A DNA stretch of 63,264 nucleotides, filler included, from Choristocarpus tenellus KU-1152 (taxonomy: Eukaryota > Protista > Phaeophyceae), in NCBI GenBank assembly GCA_964200185.2. It is 11 parts of 11 records of this genome, joined end to end, with 100 filler letters (N's around TTAATTAATTAA, not from the genome) between each part and the next. Parts side by side here need not be neighbours in the genome. Positions count along the whole stretch, not along the records: positions 41,065 to 51,781 come from CAXNAD020002760.1; 10 more parts are not named here. One strand, given 5' to 3'. The notes under the pieces were generated by a model, which worked only from the letters and a program-made list of their open reading frames with translations, ran no database searches and was not told the origin of the DNA. Below are positions 40,221 to 51,959 of the stretch, in pieces (position 1 is the stretch's first letter; every line of letters starts with the position of its first letter). Position numbers and translations under genes: made by a program.

Positions 40221-41482
40221 GTGAGTGACGCCTTAGGACAGTTTGTTTTAGTTTCTCTCAGTGCACTTTTGGTGCCTGCCCCCGTTGTGTCATGCCTAAG
40301 TCCTTGTCCTGGCTGGTGGTTGCTCTAGACTATTTATTTTTTTGTGGGAAGGGGGTTGGGGTTTTTTTTTCCTGTGTTGCTTTCTGTTTTTACTGATATC
40401 CCACCCTGCTTTTTTTTTGTGTGATGAATCCTGATCTCTAGGTAGCGTCAGTTGTTGTTTTGGCGCTATTTGATGATGTTATGGTCCGTAGATCCTGCTA
40501 GGATTTCATTTTGTGCGTTGAATACTTCCAACTTCCCATGCGTTATGTCGGCATGATTGTTCTAGTTTATATCGCCATCACCATTACTGTTATTAGAACT
40601 TGCGCAGAGATTCTGAGACCCCTGCGTATGTGCACGTGCGTGTATGTGTTTACAAATTATGAACGGTGATGGCTGTCCAGTTCTGTCAACTGCTGTCGGG
40701 TTTTATCATACTCAGTATGTCTCACCTCTATTTTTTTTTCCCCTTCTCTGTCTCTGGACAAGAAACAAACCCTGTTTGTGAGTTTAAAATGAATCACGTA
40801 CAATAGTCTCGGAGCAGTGAGTTGAGCACGTCGACTGACTGCGTTTGCATTCTTTTGAGATTGATCCTTTTTTGGGGGGGGGTGGGGGGGGGGGGGGGGG
40901 AGGGGGGGGGCGGATTTTTTTTGGTTAAAGTCGCAAACGCCTTTTTTACCAAAAACAAAACAGANNNNNNNNNNNNNNNNNNNNNNNNNNNNNNNNNNNN
41001 NNNNNNNNTTAATTAATTAANNNNNNNNNNNNNNNNNNNNNNNNNNNNNNNNNNNNNNNNNNNNCCCCCCCTCCCCGGATACTTTGGATCCTGTACATCT
41101 TCTCATCTTCTAGTGATTTGTCAAAAGATGTCTTATAATAGCACTGGATGGATGCCTTGATTTAAATTGTCTTGTCATGCATATTTTCATGTAGTTCAAG
41201 TCAATGTGATAATAGAATCATACTTGAAGGTACTTGAGCATGGAGGATATTGCCAGGGCAAAATAAGGCCTGCCCTAATGTCCCTCTATATAGTTAAAGT
41301 TCTTGAGCCCCTTTAAGATGAGATTGAGAGATTGAACTGTTCAATTGATTGTACCTGCTCCGTCTACTCATCATCTACAGAGGAGCAGACTATGGGCATT
41401 TGGAGGTTTTGGAGCAGGCACTTCCTCTCTTGCCATGCTGATCACAGCTCAAAGGGATCCGTGTAAGTGGAGAAGTGCATAC

Positions 41483-41587
41483 CTTGTGGCCATGGTGAAG
41501 GAGGTGCCCCAAGCTATTATGGGCGTAAGAAGCCCCAGGATTGATGCGTAGGGCTTCTCTGTAGTATTCTTCGGCACCTTTGTGGTC
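41483..41587 (-). CDS. Receptor-like protein, TPR exon 2 (DHKGAEEYYREALRINPGASYAHNSLGHLLHHGHK)
   Basis: 105 nt, TAG/GTATG ends, phase 0-0; TPR pattern A..YY..AL...P….A…LG.LL. Confidence 0.88.
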
Positions 41588-41651
41588 CTAGAAACATTTC
41601 AGGGAAACATGGGTATAAAACAAAGCAGAATACATCAAATCTAGGGTTATT

Positions 41652-42100
41652 GGGTCAAGGAAATTAGGTACCTAGAGTTGCTTGCATATTAGGGTCAAAG
41701 TGTATGCGGGGGGGGTGGCGGCTGTCCATTTGGGGCCCATTTTTCCATGACGCAGTTTTTAGATGATTTGGTTGCATGCGTCGGAAGGATAAACTAAGTG
41801 CACTTCTCCTGGTCAGGGTCCGAATGGACACCCTGGTGAAGACCCCCCCCCCCCCCCTCCAGATACTTTGAGTCACTAAGGATGCTGGCTAAGGTAGAAA
41901 ATCCATCTTTTTATACAAAGGTGTACAAGAAATTTGTATTCCGAATTATGTCAAAAATAAAAAAACGTAGCAATCTACACTCTCAAGTCAATCTTAGCAC
42001 TTCATCCATACTAAGGTTAGGGTAAACTTCAAAAGATGAATAAAATCGGTTTAAAATGCAAGACGATCAAAACTTGGGTACCTCTTGTTTACTTTGACTT
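41652..42100 (-). mobile_element. MITE family B copy carrying a nested family C MITE (41692-41874)
   Basis: Family B ends gggtcaagg…ggtacc / ggtacctcttgtttactttgact; inner element gggtcaaagt…ccagatactttgagtc flanked by ATTA/ACTA. Confidence 0.8.
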
Positions 42101-43216
42101 TTTAGTTTTTTTGAATTCGTAACAGCTCTCCAGGGGATTCTACCTGTGTCAATGACTATGGTTAGAGTTAACAACAGGGACTGTGTCTAATGTCTTACTC
42201 GGACAAACAAGATTCAACCATAAAAATAATCAAGGGGATTTTGAGGACCTCACTCTTGCTGCTTTGGTAATGTCCAGGGTACTGCATTGTTGCCACACTC
42301 CAGTCACAACTCTAGACTTTTGTAATGGTGCTTTGATGTCCCTGCTTTGGTAATATCTATCCTTCATTGCTTCTTTTACATTTCAATGCACAGCCTTTGC
42401 CATGAAGGTAGTATCTAGGAAACATATCTCCAAATTTGGATCTTCATCTCTTGGAGGCAAGAAAATTATCATTATTGTATCGGGAATTCCCTGATTTCCT
42501 GCTTGTGGGCAACTAGTTCCTCATACTGTGCCATTTTGTTTAACGAATTTCCTCACCCTTGATGTCTACCTTCCCCTCAGAGCTGCAGTCCCTCTTGAAA
42601 TCGATAAGCCAACTCTTTTGATCTGCCAAGGCTCAACTTGCTATGGGGTTCGATTTTGAATTTGCATGCCAAATTCACTGGTAACTTCTACGAAGAATTA
42701 GGCTGCACTCTCCTATGGATCTGATGGTACTAAGAAAGGGTAAACTAGAACAAAAATGAGACCTGATGTTTTCTGCTCAAAGATATAGGGAGGATTATAT
42801 ATTATTGTCCTAAGTGGAAATCCAATCCTCTGTGGTTGAGGGTTCATAGTTGACATTTGGAAGTATTTCACTAATGTGGACTGCATTTCAGTATGAACAT
42901 GCTTCTTTCGGATTGGGTAACTACTATTCTGGGTATCTCATCTTACCTAGTGAGTCAAACACAGTATTGACTAAAGTCATTCTTATACCAAGAGGAAGGA
43001 TGTTGAGGAGTGGTGCCTCGGAAGGGAGCTGAATCAACTGCTTACTCACTTGGCTGGATTTAATGGCCATTGTCAAACCATCCTGTTGATCAGGCTCCCT
43101 TTCCCACCCGAAATGCTTGAAATGTGATCACTCATCGCTGTCACAAGCATGTGTCAATAATGTTTGAGAACATGGATAGTAGGGAACACACTGGGGTAGG
43201 GGGGGCTCTGTCTCAC

Positions 43217-43324
43217 CTTGTGGACCGTCTCCAGGAGGTATCCCAGATTGTTGTGGGCAACAGCATCATTGGGGTCCTCCTCAATGGTGAGCCGAAGTTT
43301 GTCTTCCTCGCTTTGATACTTCTT
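43217..43324 (-). CDS. Receptor-like protein, TPR exon 1 (KKYQSEEDKLRLTIEEDPNDAVAHNNLGYLLETVHK)
   Basis: 108 nt, CAG/GTGAG ends, phase 0-0; DP.DA.AHNNLG.LL TPR motif. Confidence 0.88.
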
Positions 43325-44858
43325 CTGTAGTATTAGTTTGTGACAGATGCAGGGATCAGTGTAGGCATGTGGAGGACAGAAATATCTTATCTTTTACAAA
43401 GCCTATGGTACGTATGAATCAACCTTTTCCACCTGTGGTTTTTTTTGAACAGTTTGAAGTGTGTTGTTGTGAAGGGCATCTAAAGAGTTGGAAAAAAAGA
43501 ATTCGCATATTTCCCCTGAAAAGTATGATTGGCAATGATTCAGCACTACTCTACTTGAAATACAAATAAAATTTCTCCCTTTAAATGACCCTTGATATGC
43601 TAGAGTTGATGTGATGACAAAATGTGATGGCGATGTATGTATGGCCTTGCATATGGCTAAAGAATCCCTTCCATCCTTGACAAAACCAACAGTACACGCA
43701 TCATTTGCACTACTGAGTTCTCCCTCCCTCTCACAAGTAACACTGTATAGTTCATATCAACCTTTCTGTACTAGTTCCGAACAAGTTTTGCTCTACTACA
43801 CTGAAGGGTCTTTTTTTATTGACTCAACCAGCTGGAACACACAACAATTAAATCACAGTTGATTCCAGGGCCGGCATTAACAGGGGAGATATGAACTGGT
43901 ACATTTCATCCTGAAGGATGGCACTTCTTCTCTGGAGTATAAATATTAGGGTTAGGGTTAGTTTTGAAGAAGCAATAGTAAGAATGTTCAGGGTTAGGGT
44001 TAGAGTCGCATGGAACATGGTACGAAAAGCTATACTTATACTATCAGGATGAACTACCCAAAACGTTCCCCTACTCCCCTGAATGTTACATATTGGCACT
44101 ATATTTATGTAGTAGATAAGTATTGCAGGCATTATCATATCGCTTGGCAAATGCTCAATAGTGCACTTTCTAAGAAGGAACAAGTTGATGCAGACATGTA
44201 GGCACATAACAGGACTAAGGTGGTGTACCAAGATTTACATGTACATGGGAATATATTTGAAGAGTGTATACACTTATTCAAGATGGTAGGATATATGGGA
44301 TGAGAGTGCCACCTTTTCACTTCCCATAGAGGCACATGTCGCTCTGAAAATGGAGATGGACCTATGAGATGTGATTAGTACAGATGAGAATAAAACCTGT
44401 GAGGGCTATGGTGTAAGATGAACATGTTGTCAACACACCGTAAGAGGAACTACTTTGGTACATATTGAGATACCTTGCCCCCACTTGAAAAGAGGATCCA
44501 AAACCGTTGAGATAGATGGGCAACAAACACCCTATGCCTTAAACACATCTAAAATGGAGAAGAATTATCCCCCCTCCTCCCAAGTTGAACCAACAATTAC
44601 TTCTTTGATCATTTCCACTATGTTTCAGAGTCGAAATTCTGCTCCCTACCTAAGCGTACTGGATCTGTGGAGAAAAGTCTGACAAGTCAGGTACGGACAC
44701 CATTTGAATAAAGTTATTTCCCTTTTTTTTTCTTAACGCTACATAGCCGTCTGCTTTCGTGCCCTGGTTTTTTCAAAAAGTAAGAATCTTGCTACAGTAC
44801 ATGAACAAAATCCAGTTAATGGCAGATATATCTCCTAAGCATTCGTGAGAGGGTATAC

Positions 44859-45053
44859 CTTGCGTCTGTTGTGCATCACAGTCCAGATGACAATAGCAAA
44901 CAGGATGAGAACTGAGGCTGACACAGTGAGGGCAATGGTCAGAACGTCTGTTCCTCCTGCCGGAGATGTGGATGTTGATGTGATGGGTGCTGAAGTTGGC
45001 AACACCGGGGCAAATACTCGGTGGAGGAGCTCTCCCATGGACACAGTACTCTC
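44859..45053 (-). CDS. Receptor-like protein, S/T/P stalk + transmembrane exon (…PTSAPITSTSTSPAGGTD-VLTIALTVSASVLILFAIVIWTVM-HNRRK)
   Basis: 195 nt, CAG/GT ends, phase 0-0; ~24-residue hydrophobic stretch followed by a basic stop-transfer signal. Confidence 0.82.
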
Positions 45054-45170
45054 CTGAGGAACTCACAACAAAATGGATCAGAAGAATTGTCAATTGGGAA
45101 TAATCATACAGGAACAATATAATGATGTTACTAGATATCATTTACAGTACATTAAGTAAGTCTACGTCAC

Positions 45171-45173
<3 letters not shown>

Positions 45174-45253
<80 letters not shown>
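45174..45253 (+). repeat. (TAA)n microsatellite
   Basis: Directly visible. Confidence 0.97.
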
Positions 45254-45255
<2 letters not shown>

Positions 45256-45799
45256 TACAATTACAAAAGATGGTGTATCATATTGAGTCAAGAGTATGCA
45301 ATGGTTTGAAGTTTCCTCTCTACTCCACAAATCATGATATTGATAAATCATATGTTGGGTGTTGGATACATGATATTGGAGAGCAAGTTCGCCTTGTGAC
45401 CACCGTATGAAACTATGCCTCATGCTCATATATTAATTGAGGATATTAACAGGGGAGTGGGAAACAAGTGCTGAGATATTAATTGTAGACCCTTTCAAGT
45501 GTTGAGACAAGGTGAGTAATGAGCATGAGAGTGGTGGAGTCAGGGCTTTCTCATTAGACCCTGTACGATGTTGGAGTGATTGGGAGGCTGACAATATACC
45601 CTGCAATATCCTCTACCACCCCAGATTATATTACTATAGTCATTGCCATCATACTTTTTTTTCTTTAGCTATGTTGTTGCAACGTGTTTCCCTAAACTAA
45701 GGGTTAGGGTTATTCTAAACTTGAGAAAATGTCTGGCTCCAATAGTCTAAATTCAGGAGTGTACTCAGTACATACTTCAAAAGTAAACTAGCTTAGTAC

Positions 45800-45951
45800 C
45801 TCGTTGGCAACATAGATGTTCCCTTTGTCAGGAGATATAGCCAAGGCTGCAGGCCTCATAGCAAGTGAGAGCCAGTTCAAAGACGACACAGTGCCATTGC
45901 CCCCTTCCCCTAGATCAGCTGTGATCCACGCCACATGCCCGTCTGCCCAAT
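45800..45951 (-). CDS. Receptor-like protein, beta-propeller-like exon (DWADGHVAWI…RPAALAISPDKGNIYVANE)
   Basis: CAG/GT ends, phase 1->0; P..LAISPD…IYVAN..STVS spans the junction, a YVTN/lactonase/NHL-type blade motif. Confidence 0.75.
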
Positions 45952-46628
45952 CTGTCTCATGTCAAGTTTGGGTTAGGGTAGATTAGAAGTGTTGAGATGG
46001 AACAAGTGTAGTCAAGGGCAATGAATAGGACAATGGTGTAGCTGAGAAAGGGCCAGATGTAGAGTGGGGGGTGGGAGGTGAGGGTTAGGAGATAAAGAAG
46101 GAAGTAGTCGGCATTGTGGGTTTAACTTACCACACTTATTACCAAGGAAATTTTTAGAGAAGCAACCTTTCCACAGTAGGTCCCACACAGCTTATTCAGG
46201 TCACTACGTGGACTACTGCAATCATCAGAAATTGGCAATGGGTACCTGAGAAAATCTCAAACTTGGGCATGAGTGCATGAGTGTAAAGGGGTGTTCTGGT
46301 ATAGCACTAACTCATTGACTTTCCAATCATTTAGTCTCAGAAACTCGGACCCTGCATCCAGGCTCACCCCATGATTGGTCAGATCACTGCATTGTCTACC
46401 CTATTTTGCTTGGTCAAGTCCGGTTGCTCGCATACCTAATGCTGGCAATTGTACCATTGAAAACCGACATCTTCACACACACCCTTGTTTTTGTTCAGAA
46501 TAAGAGACAAAGTTGATTAAGAGACAAGTTTGAATAAGACGTAAGGTTGAAAAATGTATGAGGTTGAATAATATGTAACGTTGAATAAGAGACAAGGTTG
46601 AATAAGAGATGGAGTTCCGTATGATTTA

Positions 46629-46888
46629 GAGTGGAAGTATCTTAGAGGGTACGAATTTTGCCCTGTTTGTCCATTTGGGGCTTGGCTTCCCACGGGTTTA
46701 TTATGACAATTTACCTACTCCGAAATGTTTAGGAGTAGGTAAAATGTATACGTTATGAAAAGGTGTGTCCGGAATAAAGGATATTGACACCTGCTAACAA
46801 ACACAATAGCCAAAATTACATCAAAATTGCAACATTGGATTTTGGCCCCCAAACGGACGTGGCTCTACCCTCTAAGACACTTTGACTC
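46629..46888 (-). mobile_element. MITE family A, intronic
   Basis: TIRs gagtggaagtatcttagagggta / taccctctaagacactttgactc. Confidence 0.92.
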
Positions 46889-47528
46889 TAAGGAACTAAA
46901 CAAGCCATTAGGTATTTGCTGAAGATTTGTAAGAATCTAAACATTCAACCATTGGAGTGTGCTGTGACCTCCTTTCATTGACTTGTGTCTAAGACAAAGA
47001 CACTGGTGAACCGCTTTTTCTTCTCCACAATGTATTGATGTACCGTTACAGACAAAAAATGAGGAATTGAATCAGAATATCTCCATAGGGTACAGCCTCC
47101 AAGAATTCTCTTCCATACTGAATAAGCCACTTCCTTGCGGCAACCGCGCCATGCAAAGCTGCATGAGACCAACCATTAGGCCTAATACTTGTGTTTGGGC
47201 ACAAGAATAGAGACAGCTGATTGATAATCAATCCAGGTCAACTGTAGTGCAAAAATCTAGCTGCTTGTTGTGTACCTCCAAAGGCAAGTCAAGGATGTGA
47301 GGAAGGGCTCACTTTCTGGTGTCAAGCCTGCAAGACCCCTTTGGATTTGAAGGATCCTTCTTGCATTATTCTACCATTTATTTGTAGGTGTTTAAAATTA
47401 GCCTTGTGAGAGAACCTCAGACAGCACAGACTATTTATTTTACTGAAGACTGATGGCATCATCACAGAGATGGCATCCGTACATGGTTGAACAAAACACT
47501 GTGTACTCTGGTTGGAACAGTATGCATT

Positions 47529-47745
47529 GAGCCAAAGTAAATGAGAGGTATCCGGATTTTGACCATTTTGCAATTTAAGTCTGTTTTTCAATCTTTTGCA
47601 GTTCGAATTTTGGCCATATTTTTATTTACATGCATGAAACAAAGTTCTCTATTGTTTGAAAAAATTCCGACACAATTCATGTTTGAAAAAAAAGAAGAAG
47701 CAGAGTTTTGCAAATGTTTGTCAGCGTCCTTAAAACACAATTCTG
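47529..47745 (+). mobile_element. MITE family B copy (degenerate)
   Basis: Terminus gagccaaagtaaatgagaggta; internal ttgtcagcgtccttaaaa block. Confidence 0.65.
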
Positions 47746-48025
47746 AGTCATTATTGGAGGTAAGTATGACCAAGAGCTGAGTGAAGAGATCAGTGGTAGA
47801 TGAATAATTGCTATCCAGGTTTGTCTCAAAGAGTGGGCATGCATAGACTTTGGGCAGTCTTCCGAGGTAGACACCCAACCTGGGAGTTGATTAGAGGCAT
47901 TGATTGGCCTAATCAGGTGCTGCTTGACCTTGAGTGAAAGAAGGATTTTGTTGTCTGGTTTATATCACAGTTTGTTATTGCTAATTAGCATCTTTACCGG
48001 GTCAAATTTCATCCTACTGCTTCAC

Positions 48026-48072
48026 CTGTTGTGTAGACATCCCCAGAGCCATCTAACACCACCAGAAGACTC
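48026..48072 (-). CDS. Receptor-like protein, short exon (SLLVVLDGSGDVYTT|D); alternative acceptor at 48077
   Basis: TAG/GT ends; phase-1 donor joins the next exon to give DGSGDVYTTDW, an NHL-like blade. Confidence 0.6.
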
Positions 48073-49142
48073 CTAGCCTAACAATGGTTGTCACACACAG
48101 CAATGGTCATTGAGGGCATGGCAGGACAATGTGGGAGTGACTGGAAAGATCATCTTTGAGGAAAATGTGTATGACCAATATATTTTTCTTTTTAATCACA
48201 GTTGAAGAGTTTCAAAAATACCTCCAATGGAAGAGGTTTGATAAACAGTCTTGTGTATGCAGAGAGGGCTCCTATTAGAAGCAGTTCAGCTCTTGAAGTG
48301 TCCCAAGACCCTTGATGTACATATACTATCATCAGTAGTCCTATAATAATGTTGTTTATGGATCCGGATCAATTCGATTTTTCTCAAGACAAAGTGGTAG
48401 ATCCATACGCCCCAGATCTTTTACATTGCTTTAAAGTCAAAGAACTGTGGAGTATTTTCAAACCGTTTGAGTATCTCAACATTCCATTACAGCTGGAACT
48501 AGTTTTCTACTATGTGCAGGTGATACCCAAAAGGGAAAAAATGGAATTAACATGGACTGTTCATGCATGAGTAGGCTGCAAAAGCTGACAGGGTGGTGGT
48601 GTTGGAGTGTGTGCAGTTTGACCAAGGTTTTCGTGTTAAACATTGATTAATTCCCTTCAATAACCCTAACCCTAAGATCAAAATAAACAGACATCAAGAA
48701 ATCACTCCATAGTACTACTTAGCTCAAGCGCAACACTTGAAGAAGTTCAAGAAGTTGCATACCACCCTAACCCTAAAGCATAAAAAAGACTGCAATCCAA
48801 AGCAGTTGGCGCATTGAAAGAGTCTTTCTTGATAGTCAATTGCAGTTGTCTGCATTGAAGGACCCAAGATGACTGCGGGATGTTAGTGCATACATGCGCC
48901 ACTGTCCTTGTGGCTTGACATGATAGCATTTTGTGTGATACTTGGTGCCCTGTGCTAGAAGAGTGTCTGAGTACATGACATGGGCAATTGATTGTTGCTG
49001 CTTTTGCTGTCTGCTCTTCCTTCTGCCGGTGTATTATTGTATTATTATATCATTGTATCATTGTATCATTGTATTGTATCATTGTATTATTGTGACTTTA
49101 TATATAACTTGCAATAGTAGCTGACTTGGAAACAAAGAGTAC

Positions 49143-49368
49143 CTCCATTTGTTCAAAGCAATTGCACCACTCAGGACTTGAGAGATCTTCTCATTTATGG
49201 TTTGTCCATTGGCAGTCCTCTTTTACTGTAAAGAATAGTATGATACATAACAACACAATCATTCCAACAAACTGACACCAATACACCAAACTCTTCCTTG
49301 AGGCTGTGATACACCTCAACCGAGAGATCGTTGTGATGCTCTAGCTCAGCCCAGACAAGATGGTGCTT
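49143..49368 (-). CDS. Receptor-like protein, two candidate upstream exons (49315-49368 and 49143-49219)
   Basis: AAG/GT ends; phases 0-0 and 0-2 chain without stops into the 48072 exon (…SGAIALNKWR|SLLVVLD). Confidence 0.45.
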
Positions 49369-50069
49369 CTTTTTTTACACCTTCTTCCAATGTACAAAAA
49401 AAAAAATCTGAACAAATCAAGGAGAAGGTAATAAAAATGATGATAATGATAACAATGATAATAACAAACATAATAATAAAAATATTAACAATAATAATAA
49501 TAGTAACAACTACAACAATTATAATAATAGTAGCATAACTGATAGTAGAATAGTGAATAGATAAAATTGTTTCACATTTATAACAACTGATACTTTTTTA
49601 CGGTTTATTCTTAAATGTGAATAGTTGTTGCTGATTTTTCCCCTGACGCATCTGGAAAATGTCAGAGGGCATAATAATAAAATAATAACAAATAATAACA
49701 ACAATTATTATTATGCTCTCTGACATTTTATTATAGTAGTAAAAATGACATAATAACAATAATAACAACAACAATAATAATAATAATAATAATATCAGGA
49801 CCATCAAAAGGTCAAATAATATTTAATCTGATCAAAATGGAACAAAAATCTCCATTTTCAGATCTGTTTTGAAAGTAATTAGTAATCTCAATCTCATTTG
49901 ATGTTTTATCAGGAAAAACATATGCTAATAAGAAAAAGATCCCCAAAGTCTACAACAGCTGCGAGCCGTACTGAGTAACCCTGTAGCAACCTGTGGCCAC
50001 TCTATCCAGTACATTGGAGCTTGCAATATGACCTCCATGTTCAACGGTCCATAAAATTCTGTATTTGTA

Positions 50070-50389
50070 TTATTATGCCCTCTGAATTTTTTGCAGATTT
50101 GTCAGGGGAAAAACCAATGAAACCTATTCAAATGTCAGAATAACCACCGAAAAAGTAACAGTTGTCGTATATGTCAAAATTATCCCTCTAAAATCTATTT
50201 ACTATTTTACTGCCAGCTATACTGTACCACTGCCTTCCTGTGTCTCCAAACCATCATCCAGACATCGATATATTGCTGAAAATAAGTATGTAATATACAT
50301 GGCATGGTATAGAAATGGAACAGAAATGTTGACTAAGTGTCATTGATGTTTCCCTGACGCATCTGCAAGATGTCAGAGGGCATAATAAT
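50070..50389. mobile_element. MITE with ~38-bp TIR in a TA-rich site; partial inverted copy at ~49540-49677
   Basis: tattatgccctctga…gcagat.tgtcagggga / tccctgacgcatctgcaagatgtcagagggcataata. Confidence 0.7.
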
Positions 50390-51082
50390 ATAATGCATGG
50401 CATGGTTCAAAGTGTTTTTGTTAGGGTCACATCATTTTCAATTGGTATGATATAATCATGGCTGAATATACTTACATACATACATGACGCCATCTTAGAT
50501 CCCTACGCCATTTTTTGGGGGGGTTGGGGCAACTATATCTGAAAATTTCCACTTTCTCATAGTTTCATTTTTTGTACCTCATTCAGAATCCTATCATTGA
50601 GGTATTAACTAATTTAACTATTAAATTAAGTTTGTGTTTCATTCATTCCATTAATAAATACATCAACACAATTCTGAAAAGGCTATAAGGTATTGTTCCT
50701 TACAAAACGAGAGTAAGTGCGTTGTATGGACTACCGCTTCCAGGTACAGACTATGTACAAAGTACCAAGTACCTCAATAAACCTTACCAGAAAAGACATC
50801 TTACTCCCTCTGTCACATAAGTCTGTTAAGTTGTAGCTCTTCGGGATGACCTCTGATTACATACTTTTGCCTTGGATTCCTTGGAATATTTTACATTAAA
50901 AAAATAATTTCAAAGAATTCTACAAAGAAATCTGTTCTGAAATGGTTCCAAAAGAATGGAACACAGAATGGGGCAAATCTTTACTTACTCCCTCTGTCGC
51001 ATGAGTCTGTATCGTTACGGTTTTTTGTGGATAATTTTTCAAATGTGAGATTCAGAAAACTACAAATAATATCGTTCCATAG

Positions 51083-51757
51083 TCAACAACATCAGTTGGC
51101 GCATATATACCTTCAAAATACCTTCAAAATACCTTCAAAATACCTTTCCATTTCAAAATGATGGAGAAACCGTTCCCTGAACACAACCATTTTTTTTTCG
51201 GAAATGGTAGATATAACAAAAATAGCAAAGCCAACCAAAAATGGCTGGAAATGGGGGGTGAATCGACCATAAAGTCTCAACGAGACCTCCGATGAAGACG
51301 CGGTTAGTTGCGTTGGATTCCTTGATGAGGCATTATTTGCATTACATTTAGTTATATTTAGTTACATTTAATTACATTTAATTTCATTTAGTTACTCGTC
51401 ACTCTCATTTTCTCCTAAGGGCGTTCTGGATCACTTGATCCCCATCGACAGATGTGCGAAAAATGAGGCCACAACTTGGTGGATTGAGGTAGAGAATGGG
51501 AGCGACGAGTGATTCATTTAATGTAAAAAACGCCTCATCAAGGAATCCAACGCAACTAACCGCGTCTTCATCGGAGGTCTTGTTGAGACGTTATTGCCGA
51601 TCAACCATCATTTCCAACCATTTTTGGTTGGTTTTGCCGTTATTGCAAAATCTGACATTTCCGAAAAAAAAAATGCTTGTGTTCAGGGAACGGTTCCTCA
51701 ACCACTTTGAAATGGAAACATATTTCCAAGAATATACATGCAAGCCGAAGTTGTTAG
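51083..51757. repeat. Long foldback: ~270-330-bp inverted arms (51083-51413 / 51492-51757), ~80-bp spacer
   Basis: Includes a perfect ~49-bp core agacctccgatgaagacgcggttagttgcgttggattccttgatgaggc and its reverse complement. Confidence 0.9.
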
Positions 51758-51959
51758 GTTTCGAGGCTGCTGCAGATAAAGNNNNNNNNNNNNNNNNNNN
51801 NNNNNNNNNNNNNNNNNNNNNNNNNTTAATTAATTAANNNNNNNNNNNNNNNNNNNNNNNNNNNNNNNNNNNNNNNNNNNNACTGTTTCTTCATTCTTGA
51901 ATTGTTTCTTCTACAGAATCTTCTTTTACACATGAATAAAAAAGCATATTCTTAACAAT

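What the first reader, a model, noticed from the sequence alone, without database searches (positions are those of the whole stretch)
41483..49368. Candidate undescribed single-pass receptor: beta-propeller-like ectodomain, S/T/P stalk, TM helix, cytosolic TPR array
Seen: seven minus-strand exons with AG/GT ends chain in phase (0-0, 0-2, 2-1, 1-0, 0-0, 0-0, 0-0) into one stop-free protein: …SGAIALNKWRSLLVVLDGSGDVYTTDWADGHVAWI…RPAALAISPDKGNIYVANEESTVS…PTSAPITSTSTSPAGG-[VLTIALTVSASVLILFAIVIWTVM]-HNRRKKK…DPNDAVAHNNLGYLL…GAEEYYREALRINPGASYAHNSLGHLL. Two blade motifs form only across splice junctions, which supports the model. Most exons are missing from the ORF track. Known: NHL/YVTN-type propellers bind ligands or carbohydrates; basic residues after a TM mark the cytosolic side; TPRs scaffold proteins. 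Inference: a type-I surface receptor or adhesion protein signalling through TPRs. I do not recognise this architecture from a characterised family. Both ends are missing (5' exons not resolved; 3' cut by the contig end at 41065), so a C-terminal catalytic domain may exist.
Basis: partly seen in the sequence, partly recalled or inferred. Interest (0 to 1): 0.8.

Follow-up and report, generated by a model that had tools for sequence, protein, structure and literature searches.

The report
Brown-alga propeller–membrane–TPR protein gene
The window holds the middle of a real spliced gene for a single-pass membrane protein with a seven-bladed propeller outside and TPR repeats inside; unstudied relatives are already deposited from several brown algae.

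Summary
Five minus-strand exons (E2–E6, 48072–41483) have canonical AG/GT ends. They match, in order and without gaps, a family of brown-algal proteins (exon E-values 1e-12 to 1e-15). They share five intron positions and phases with the Pylaiella gene; Ascophyllum keeps four of them and a third genome's contig the two around E3. E1 is plausible. E0 has no support.

The relatives show the whole protein: signal peptide, seven-bladed propeller of the lactonase/YbhE–YncE type (not a strict NHL domain), short linker, one TM helix, Lys/Arg stop-transfer, then about 4.5 OGT-like TPRs and a capping helix. They carry no C-terminal catalytic domain.

Relatives were found only in Phaeophyceae: Ectocarpus, Pylaiella, Ascophyllum, Hapterophycus, Nemacystus and Cladosiphon. 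They are labelled "unnamed protein product" or "TPR repeat-containing protein" (E. siliculosus CBN77550.1 / D8LME0). I found no paper on them.

The architecture claim therefore holds. "Undescribed" means uncharacterised, not absent from databases. A receptor or adaptor role is inference. The closest characterised analogue is PKN, the brown-algal gamete-recognition protein, which has a short acidic tail where this family has TPRs. No RNA data were available. Interest is moderate.

The parts
49315..49368 (-).
   Evidence: Stop-free with GAG|gtgtat donor, but the family profile gives no hit. By eye, two other in-frame GT..AG joins to E1 exist (donors after 49292 or 49285). Unresolved.
49143..49219 (-). 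E1, probable exon (end of propeller blade 6); phase 0-2
   Evidence: aaaag|AGG … AG|gtactc. The motif …IALNKW(R) lines up by eye with the family's …INIDKTW with no length change across the E1|E2 join. There is no profile hit, and the intron lies 5 nt from the Pylaiella/Ascophyllum position.
48026..48072 (-). E2, 47-nt exon, first strands of the last blade (…LLVVLDGSGDVYTT)
   Evidence: tblastn to P0092: 9 of 11 identical. Profile positions 374-388, E 0.036. The donor position and phase (1) are identical in Pylaiella. An alternative acceptor at 48077 would give the orthologues' 52-nt exon but does not fit the E1 donor.
45800..45951 (-). E3, last propeller blade
   Evidence: Profile E 1.8e-15. 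40-48% identity to five relatives. Both boundaries are conserved in Pylaiella, Ascophyllum and contig L003. Language-model features give NHL/YncE/lactonase clusters at 0.92. Pfam NHL is only 13.2 bits.
44859..45053 (-). E4: closing strand of the propeller, linker, TM helix, stop-transfer
   Evidence: Collinear with family profile positions 455-489. Both boundaries are conserved in Pylaiella.
44952..44999 (-). Short S/T/P-rich linker (16 residues) within E4
   Evidence: Read from the translation. The equivalent linker in relatives is D/S/G/T-rich and poorly conserved (45% Ectocarpus-Ascophyllum for linker plus TM).
44874..44945 (-). Transmembrane helix (24 residues) within E4
   Evidence: Kyte-Doolittle 19-residue mean up to 2.68. 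Relatives have one such segment at the same place.
44859..44873 (-). Basic stop-transfer HNRRK (continued by KK in E5)
   Evidence: Relatives have …QRKR… at this place.
43217..43324 (-). E5: juxtamembrane helix plus helix A of TPR 1; phase 0-0, 108 nt
   Evidence: Profile E 1.9e-12. 63-69% identity to relatives. Pfam TPR_17 E 1e-4. The donor position is conserved.
41483..41587 (-). E6: helix B of TPR 1 plus helix A of TPR 2; phase 0-0, 105 nt
   Evidence: Profile E 8.7e-13. 69-71% identity. Pfam TPR_1 E 3e-5. It has the same 105-nt exon and the same boundaries as in Pylaiella. The next exons lie beyond the piece's end at 41065.

Best explanation
The piece carries the middle of an intact, spliced, minus-strand gene of a brown alga or a close relative. 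The gene belongs to the family typified by Ectocarpus siliculosus CBN77550.1 / D8LME0.

Shown, from the full-length relatives: the product is a type-I single-pass membrane protein. It has a signal peptide, a seven-bladed lactonase/YncE-type beta-propeller facing outside or the lumen, a short linker, one TM helix and a Lys/Arg stop-transfer. On the cytosolic side it has about 4.5 OGT/SPINDLY-like TPRs ending in a capping helix. There is no enzyme domain on the cytosolic side.

Shown for the window itself: it holds the last one and a half to two blades, the linker, the TM helix and the first one and a half TPRs. The signal peptide, blades 1-5 and the last TPRs lie off the contig.

Inferred mechanism: the propeller binds an extracellular partner, such as a cell-wall or matrix glycan or a surface protein. 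The highly conserved TPR groove holds an extended peptide of a cytosolic partner. The protein would then work as a non-catalytic receptor or adaptor, like a brown-algal propeller receptor kinase with a docking module in place of the kinase.

My odds: identity and architecture about 0.9; the receptor/adaptor mechanism about 0.4.
For: - Exon chain and splice sites.
- Ordered, gap-free profile hits. tblastn of P0092 onto the piece.
- Conserved intron positions in other brown-algal genomes.
- Relative P0092 was found with exon E3 alone, as the only long protein hit by one stretch covering the whole exon.
- Family members and names.
- Signal peptides and a single TM.
- Ectodomain: Pfam Lactonase 1.4e-9, above its cut-off; PDB profile hits to YbhE, Pgl and PpgL at 1e-18 to 8e-23 and to an archaeal YVTN surface-layer protein at 2e-16.
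- AlphaFold2 model of the ectodomain: pLDDT 81.7, pTM 0.84, 28 strands, which fits 7 blades. It matches seven-bladed propellers at Z 30-32 and Foldseek E 2e-13.
- Four invariant Cys in the ectodomain fit an extracytosolic site.
- TPR part: OGT 1e-35 and SPINDLY 3e-16, modelled at pLDDT 85-96 as nine helices plus a cap.
- The TPR part is the most conserved region: 76.6% Ectocarpus-Ascophyllum, against 63.9% for the ectodomain.
- Among 298 proteins fetched, only the 13 brown-algal ones combine the propeller and the TPR parts.
Against: - No transcript evidence for this organism.
- The 5' two thirds of the ectodomain and the 3' TPRs are not on the contig, and no upstream exon is detectable in 49220-51781.
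- E0 and E1 are unsupported or weakly supported, and the E1|E2 intron is displaced by 5 nt.
- Nothing here shows ligand binding, subcellular location or a partner.
- A lactonase-type fold could equally be catalytic.
- The taxonomic restriction rests on capped, word-limited searches.
Confidence: 0.6

Rival explanations
1. Membrane-anchored enzyme. The propeller is an active extracellular or lumenal lactonase, or a related hydrolase or lyase acting on sugar lactones or cell-wall-derived compounds. The TPR tail only positions or regulates it.
For: The best sequence relatives of the ectodomain are 6-phosphogluconolactonase-type propellers and the periplasmic gluconolactonase PpgL.
Against: Identity to those enzymes is only 12-18%. 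Non-catalytic members of the same clan, such as YncE and the archaeal surface-layer protein, score in the same range. Catalytic residues were not examined. The most conserved part is the TPR tail, not the propeller.
Confidence: 0.2
2. Endomembrane sorting or quality-control adaptor (ER, Golgi or vacuole). The lumenal propeller binds cargo or glycans and the cytosolic TPRs recruit chaperones or coat components. It would not be a cell-surface receptor.
For: TPR domains on membrane anchors commonly dock chaperones or targeting factors (general knowledge). The signal peptide with a single TM does not tell plasma membrane from endomembranes.
Against: There is no ER-retention or sorting motif that I could name in the C-terminus (…EEGKH). 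The TPRs resemble OGT-type repeats rather than Hsp70/Hsp90-clamp TPR proteins in the PDB ranking. This is weak evidence.
Confidence: 0.12
3. Decaying or truncated copy. In this genome the gene is a pseudogene or a partial duplicate that lacks blades 1-5.
For: No homology-supported exon lies upstream of E2 within 3.7 kb. The region equivalent to one orthologue exon (E0/E1) is frame-broken unless a short extra intron is assumed. The introns hold high-copy repeats.
Against: E2-E6 are all open, with intact canonical splice sites at conserved positions and 63-71% identity in the TPR exons. Orthologue introns reach more than 8 kb, so the missing exons may simply lie beyond 51781.
Confidence: 0.07
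4. Chance chain of open segments with AG/GT ends; no gene.
For: None beyond the fact that short stop-free AG..GT segments are common.
Against: Three exons hit the family profile at 1e-12 to 1e-15, in order and abutting. Intron positions are shared with other genomes.
Confidence: 0.01

Closest known systems
Ectocarpus siliculosus CBN77550.1 / UniProt D8LME0 'TPR repeat-containing protein' and its brown-algal orthologues (Pylaiella CAN0328345.1, Ectocarpus spp., Ascophyllum, Hapterophycus, Nemacystus, Cladosiphon)
   Same: Same domain order. Collinear sequence at 40-48% (blade exon) to 63-71% (TPR exons). Same intron positions and phases.
   Different: The window copy is the most divergent one seen. 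Its linker is S/T/P-rich. The E1|E2 intron is shifted by 5 nt. Its ends are missing. None of these proteins has been studied.
PKN (PICKINESS-ASSOCIATED PROTEIN), female gamete recognition factor of brown algae (bioRxiv 10.64898/2026.02.20.706836)
   Same: Brown-alga-restricted type-I protein with a signal peptide, a seven-bladed propeller, a Ser/Thr/Pro-rich region and a single TM helix.
   Different: PKN has a long mucin-like region and a short acidic cytoplasmic tail. This family has a 16-residue linker and a roughly 190-residue TPR domain. Sequence relatedness to PKN was not tested, because I held no PKN sequence.
Brown-algal beta-propeller receptor kinases (Phaeoexplorer, bioRxiv 10.1101/2024.02.19.579948)
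   Same: Propeller ectodomain plus a single TM plus a cytosolic module in brown algae.
   Different: Those carry a kinase domain. No kinase or other enzyme domain exists in full-length relatives of this gene.
Bacterial seven-bladed lactonase-type propellers (E. coli YbhE/Pgl 1ri6, P. aeruginosa PpgL 6igb, E. coli YncE 3vgz; Pfam PF10282)
   Same: Same fold and a detectable sequence relationship for the ectodomain.
   Different: Those are soluble or periplasmic single-domain proteins without a TM helix or TPRs. Identity is 12-18%.
TPR domain of O-GlcNAc transferase / SPINDLY
   Same: Best natural PDB matches of the cytosolic repeats, at 1e-35 and 3e-16. They share the recurring …A.A..NLG.LL… pattern, which includes the Asn that OGT uses to hold peptide backbones (general knowledge).
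   Different: There are only about 4.5 repeats, no glycosyltransferase domain, and the repeats are tethered to a membrane.
Ectocarpus NB-ARC-TPR genes with one repeat per exon (Zambounis et al. 2012, PMC3341825)
   Same: TPRs are carried on phase-0 exons of about one repeat each.
   Different: Those exons are 126 nt (42 aa), numerous and shuffled. Here the exons are 108 and 105 nt, start in mid-repeat, and are fixed at orthologous positions across orders.

Membership tests
Brown-algal propeller–TM–TPR family (CBN77550 / D8LME0 type) | Collinear sequence similarity over last blade, TM and TPRs | tested here: met
   Profile hits for E2-E6 are ordered and abutting; E3 1.8e-15, E5 1.9e-12, E6 8.7e-13. 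tblastn.
Brown-algal propeller–TM–TPR family (CBN77550 / D8LME0 type) | Shared intron positions and phases | tested here: met
   Five of six junctions are identical to Pylaiella, and most recur in Ascophyllum and L003. E1|E2 is displaced by 5 nt.
Brown-algal propeller–TM–TPR family (CBN77550 / D8LME0 type) | Signal peptide and blades 1-5; TPRs 3-5 and capping helix | not testable with these tools
   These parts lie outside the 10.7-kb piece. No upstream exon was found in 49220-51781.
Pfam PF10282 Lactonase, seven-bladed beta-propeller | Score above the gathering cut-off (21.7 bits) | tested here: inconclusive
   Met by the relatives' ectodomains, at 38.1 bits. The window holds only the last one and a half to two blades, and its exons give no PF10282 hit.
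Pfam PF01436 NHL repeat | Score above the gathering cut-off (20 bits) | tested here: not met
   E3 scores 13.2 bits, E 0.099. Relatives score 13-16 bits.
TPR (Pfam clan; TPR_1, TPR_17 and others) | 34-residue helix-turn-helix repeat above the cut-off | tested here: inconclusive
   Each exon carries half-repeats and scores just under the cut-offs: 22.6 against 24.4 and 23.9 against 27.8 bits. The relatives score 85 bits for TPR_17. The joined repeat was not scored, by rule.
PKN gamete-recognition proteins | Short acidic cytoplasmic tail after the TM; long mucin-like region | tested here: not met
   The tail here is a TPR domain and the linker has 16 residues.
PKN gamete-recognition proteins | Sequence homology of the propeller | not tested
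   No PKN sequence was available through the tools.
Receptor kinases (brown-algal LRR or propeller type) | Cytosolic protein kinase domain | tested here: not met
   No kinase family appears in Pfam scans of the full-length relative P0092. The relatives end after the TPRs.

The most novel reading that the evidence does not exclude
The family may be a brown-alga-specific, non-kinase surface receptor. A rapidly diverging seven-bladed propeller would read an extracellular cue (cell wall or matrix state, a gamete or a pathogen surface). A near-invariant OGT-like TPR groove would pass the signal on by recruiting a cytosolic partner. That would be a transmembrane signalling design not described in any lineage, possibly sister to the PKN gamete-recognition system.
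Probability: 0.25. Interest if true: 0.65.

Novelty: new variant of a known kind. Interest (0 to 1): 0.4.

Why it matters
Brown algae evolved complex multicellularity independently, and their membrane signalling parts are only now being catalogued: LRR and propeller receptor kinases, and PKN.

This family appears single-copy, is found in several brown-algal orders (Ectocarpales and Fucales here), and seems confined to brown algae. It pairs a propeller ectodomain with a strongly conserved cytosolic TPR module. That makes it a concrete candidate for a kinase-independent surface-to-cytosol link.

CRISPR knock-outs now work in Ectocarpus, as the PKN study shows. The finding itself adds one divergent family member and a homology-checked gene model. 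It adds no functional data.

Tried and rejected
- Word search with exon E3 alone found nothing. Its length window excludes full-length proteins.
- The RNA-run search found no RNA holders.
- Rfam found nothing in the piece.
- phmmer of E3, E5 and E6 against all stop-free segments found no extra blade or TPR exons in the introns. Only E5 and E6 hit each other.
- The family profile found no upstream exons in 49220-51781 and does not recognise E0 or E1.
- Pfam on the eight longest other open frames of the piece gave nothing credible, so there is no second gene.
- Structure comparison cannot separate lactonase-type from WD40 propellers; all tie at Z 30-32. The assignment rests on sequence profiles.
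- Considered and rejected: a strict NHL domain (below cut-off), a receptor kinase (no kinase domain), PKN itself (different tail), and an exon-shuffling TPR gene of the NB-ARC-TPR type (different exon size and fixed orthologous positions).
- Left out by rule: the exons were never joined into one protein for any search, scan or fold. All searches used single exons by reference or database relatives.

Full report
**What is in the sequence**

On the minus strand of the piece (41065-51781) six segments have canonical splice sites and compatible phases:

| Exon | Coordinates | Phase |
|---|---|---|
| E1 | 49219-49143 | 0-2 |
| E2 | 48072-48026 | 2-1 |
| E3 | 45951-45800 | 1-0 |
| E4 | 45053-44859 | 0-0 |
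| E5 | 43324-43217 | 0-0 |
| E6 | 41587-41483 | 0-0 |

The introns are 1070, 2074, 746, 1534 and 1629 nt long. Exons have 51.6% G+C against 39.8% in the introns.

E4 holds a 16-residue S/T/P-rich linker and a 24-residue hydrophobic helix (Kyte-Doolittle 19-residue mean up to 2.68). The helix is followed by HNRRK, which E5 continues with KK.

Taken singly, the exons give only weak family hits:
- E3: NHL 13.2 bits, below the 20-bit cut-off.
- E5: TPR_17, E 1e-4.
- E6: TPR_1, E 3e-5.

Language-model features of E3 point to NHL/YncE/lactonase propeller clusters (0.92, all ten best hits in one clan).

**Finding relatives**

Every search used one exon by reference, or a database protein.

A word search with E3 was blank, because its length window excludes full-length proteins. 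The exhaustive HMMER search with E3 returned many bacterial multi-repeat propeller proteins. It also returned four hits in which one stretch covers the whole exon. Three of these are short ORF fragments. The fourth is a 527-residue protein, P0092.

P0092 is Pylaiella littoralis CAN0328345.1, an "unnamed protein product".

Searching with P0092 found full-length relatives in:
- several Ectocarpus species;
- Ascophyllum nodosum;
- Hapterophycus canaliculatus;
- Nemacystus decipiens;
- Cladosiphon okamuranus;
- E. siliculosus, as CBN77550.1 / D8LME0, "TPR repeat-containing protein".

**Proof of the gene model by comparison**

- tblastn of P0092 onto the piece hits E2 (9 of 11 identical), E3 (45%, 1.7e-12), E5 (63%, 1e-10) and E6 (69%, 5e-11). 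The match boundaries fall at the proposed splice sites.
- A profile of five family members, run against all 588 stop-free segments of both strands, hits E2-E6 in order and abutting in profile coordinates.
- Mapping P0092 onto its own 21-kb gene (L001) shows introns at the same codon and phase for E2|E3, E3|E4, E4|E5, E5|E6 and after E6.
- The Ascophyllum gene (L002) keeps four of them, its E2|E3 join being annotated differently. An unrelated Logan contig (L003) keeps the two boundaries of the E3 exon.

**Weak spots**

- E1 gets no profile hit. It fits only through a short motif (…IALNKW against the family's …INIDKTW) and through the absence of any length change across the join.
- The E1|E2 intron sits 5 nt downstream of the orthologues' phase-0 position. 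A tandem acceptor at 48077 would give the orthologues' 52-nt exon, but it does not fit the E1 donor.
By eye there are two further in-frame GT..AG joins to E1.
- In Pylaiella and Ascophyllum this region is one exon. The window has either gained a short intron there or is damaged there.
- No upstream blade exon is detectable up to 51781. Orthologue introns reach more than 8 kb, so the 5' exons probably lie off the contig.
- No RNA run exists for the organism in the index. The two holders are genomic contigs identical to the window.

**What the protein is**

The relatives supply the missing ends.
- E. siliculosus P0298 begins with a classic signal peptide. P0152 and P0154 have one after over-extended predicted starts.
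- Each relative has exactly one further hydrophobic segment.

The ectodomain:
- It passes Pfam's Lactonase (seven-bladed propeller) cut-off, at 38.1 against 21.7 bits.
- As a profile, it hits E. coli YbhE (8e-23), other 6-phosphogluconolactonase-type propellers, the periplasmic gluconolactonase PpgL, and an archaeal YVTN surface-layer protein.
- AlphaFold2 on the E. siliculosus ectodomain gives pLDDT 81.7, pTM 0.84 and 28 strands, which fits seven four-stranded blades.
- Foldseek's top hits are putative 6-phosphogluconolactonases and WD40 proteins.
- VIA-align ties all seven-bladed propellers at Z 30-32, YncE included. Structure therefore gives the fold, and sequence gives the subtype.
- Four Cys are invariant in the ectodomain.

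The cytosolic part:
- It matches the TPR domains of OGT (1e-35) and SPINDLY.
- In the full-length model it forms nine TPR helices plus a capping helix at pLDDT 85-96.
- The relatives stop there, so no C-terminal catalytic domain is expected.

The window encodes the end of blade 6, blade 7, the closing strand, the linker, the TM helix, the juxtamembrane helix and one and a half TPRs.

**Distribution and conservation**

- An ectodomain-only word search found, outside brown algae, only secreted multi-propeller proteins at 24-47% identity. None of them has a TM helix or TPRs.
- Each species gave one cluster, which suggests a single-copy gene.
- Between Ectocarpus and Ascophyllum the TPR region is 76.6% identical, the ectodomain 63.9%, and the linker plus TM 45%.
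- The window copy is the most divergent: 40-48% in E3 and 63-71% in E5 and E6.
- These limits rest on capped searches.

**How it probably works**

Shown: a type-I topology with the propeller outside and the TPRs inside.

Inferred: the propeller binds an extracellular partner, and the conserved, OGT-like TPR groove docks a cytosolic peptide. That would make a non-catalytic receptor or adaptor.

Rivals:
- a membrane-anchored lactonase-type enzyme;
- an endomembrane sorting or quality-control adaptor;
- a decaying copy in this genome.

A chance ORF chain is excluded.

**Comparison with the literature**

- No paper in the library mentions CBN77550 or D8LME0.
- No paper in the library pairs an extracellular propeller with cytosolic TPRs.
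- The nearest characterised protein is PKN, a brown-alga-specific gamete-recognition protein. It has a signal peptide, a seven-bladed propeller, a mucin-like region and a TM helix, but a short acidic tail.
- The Phaeoexplorer study reports propeller-ectodomain receptor kinases in brown algae.
- The one-repeat-per-exon layout recalls the Ectocarpus NB-ARC-TPR genes. Those exons are 126 nt and shuffled. Here the exons are 108 and 105 nt and fixed at orthologous positions.

**Verdict**

The architecture is supported. The function is unproven. The family is already deposited in databases but uncharacterised. I rate it a new variant of a known kind, of moderate interest.

Noticed in passing
window 46617-47016 (intron between E2 and E3): Extremely high-copy dispersed repeat. 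Summed contig word depth is about 8e5 in run X1, against about 21 for the flanks. Many contig joints and loose ends fall here. It lies next to a 17/34-nt tandem array at 46498-46609.
   Followed up: partly
window 43946, 43988, 43994, 45698, 45967, 48664, 48765: Telomere-type (TTAGGG)2 dimers: 7 matches with at most 1 mismatch, against 0.07 expected. All lie in introns of this gene. Contig joints link 43961-43967 with 47525-47529 and 48653, so they probably sit in copies of one dispersed element.
   Followed up: partly
window 51133-51347 and 51516-51730: A roughly 600-bp foldback: inverted arms in three blocks, 82-86% complementary. Similar open frames lie on both arms, with no Pfam hit. Probably a small non-autonomous transposable element.
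   Followed up: partly
window 45174-45257; 49429-49529; 49750-49794: An (AAT)n microsatellite of 28 units in the E3-E4 intron, and further AAT-rich low-complexity tracts upstream of E0.
   Followed up: no
window 49638-49683 and 50349-50394: A 46-nt direct repeat, 91% identical, 711 nt apart. Together with the inverted pair 49570-49659 / 50089-50178, it suggests another small repeat element upstream of the gene.
   Followed up: no
window 48072-48077 and L001 24545-24552: Tandem acceptors 5 nt apart (ttag|gctag|G). The window's donor-acceptor pair is shifted 5 nt from the phase-0 intron of Pylaiella and Ascophyllum while protein length is kept. This is a possible case of intron sliding.
   Followed up: partly
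P0152, P0154 (database relatives): Several deposited gene models start 60-100 residues upstream of the evident signal peptide, and P0092 and P0153 lack the N-terminus. The public annotations of this family are inconsistent at the 5' end.
   Followed up: no
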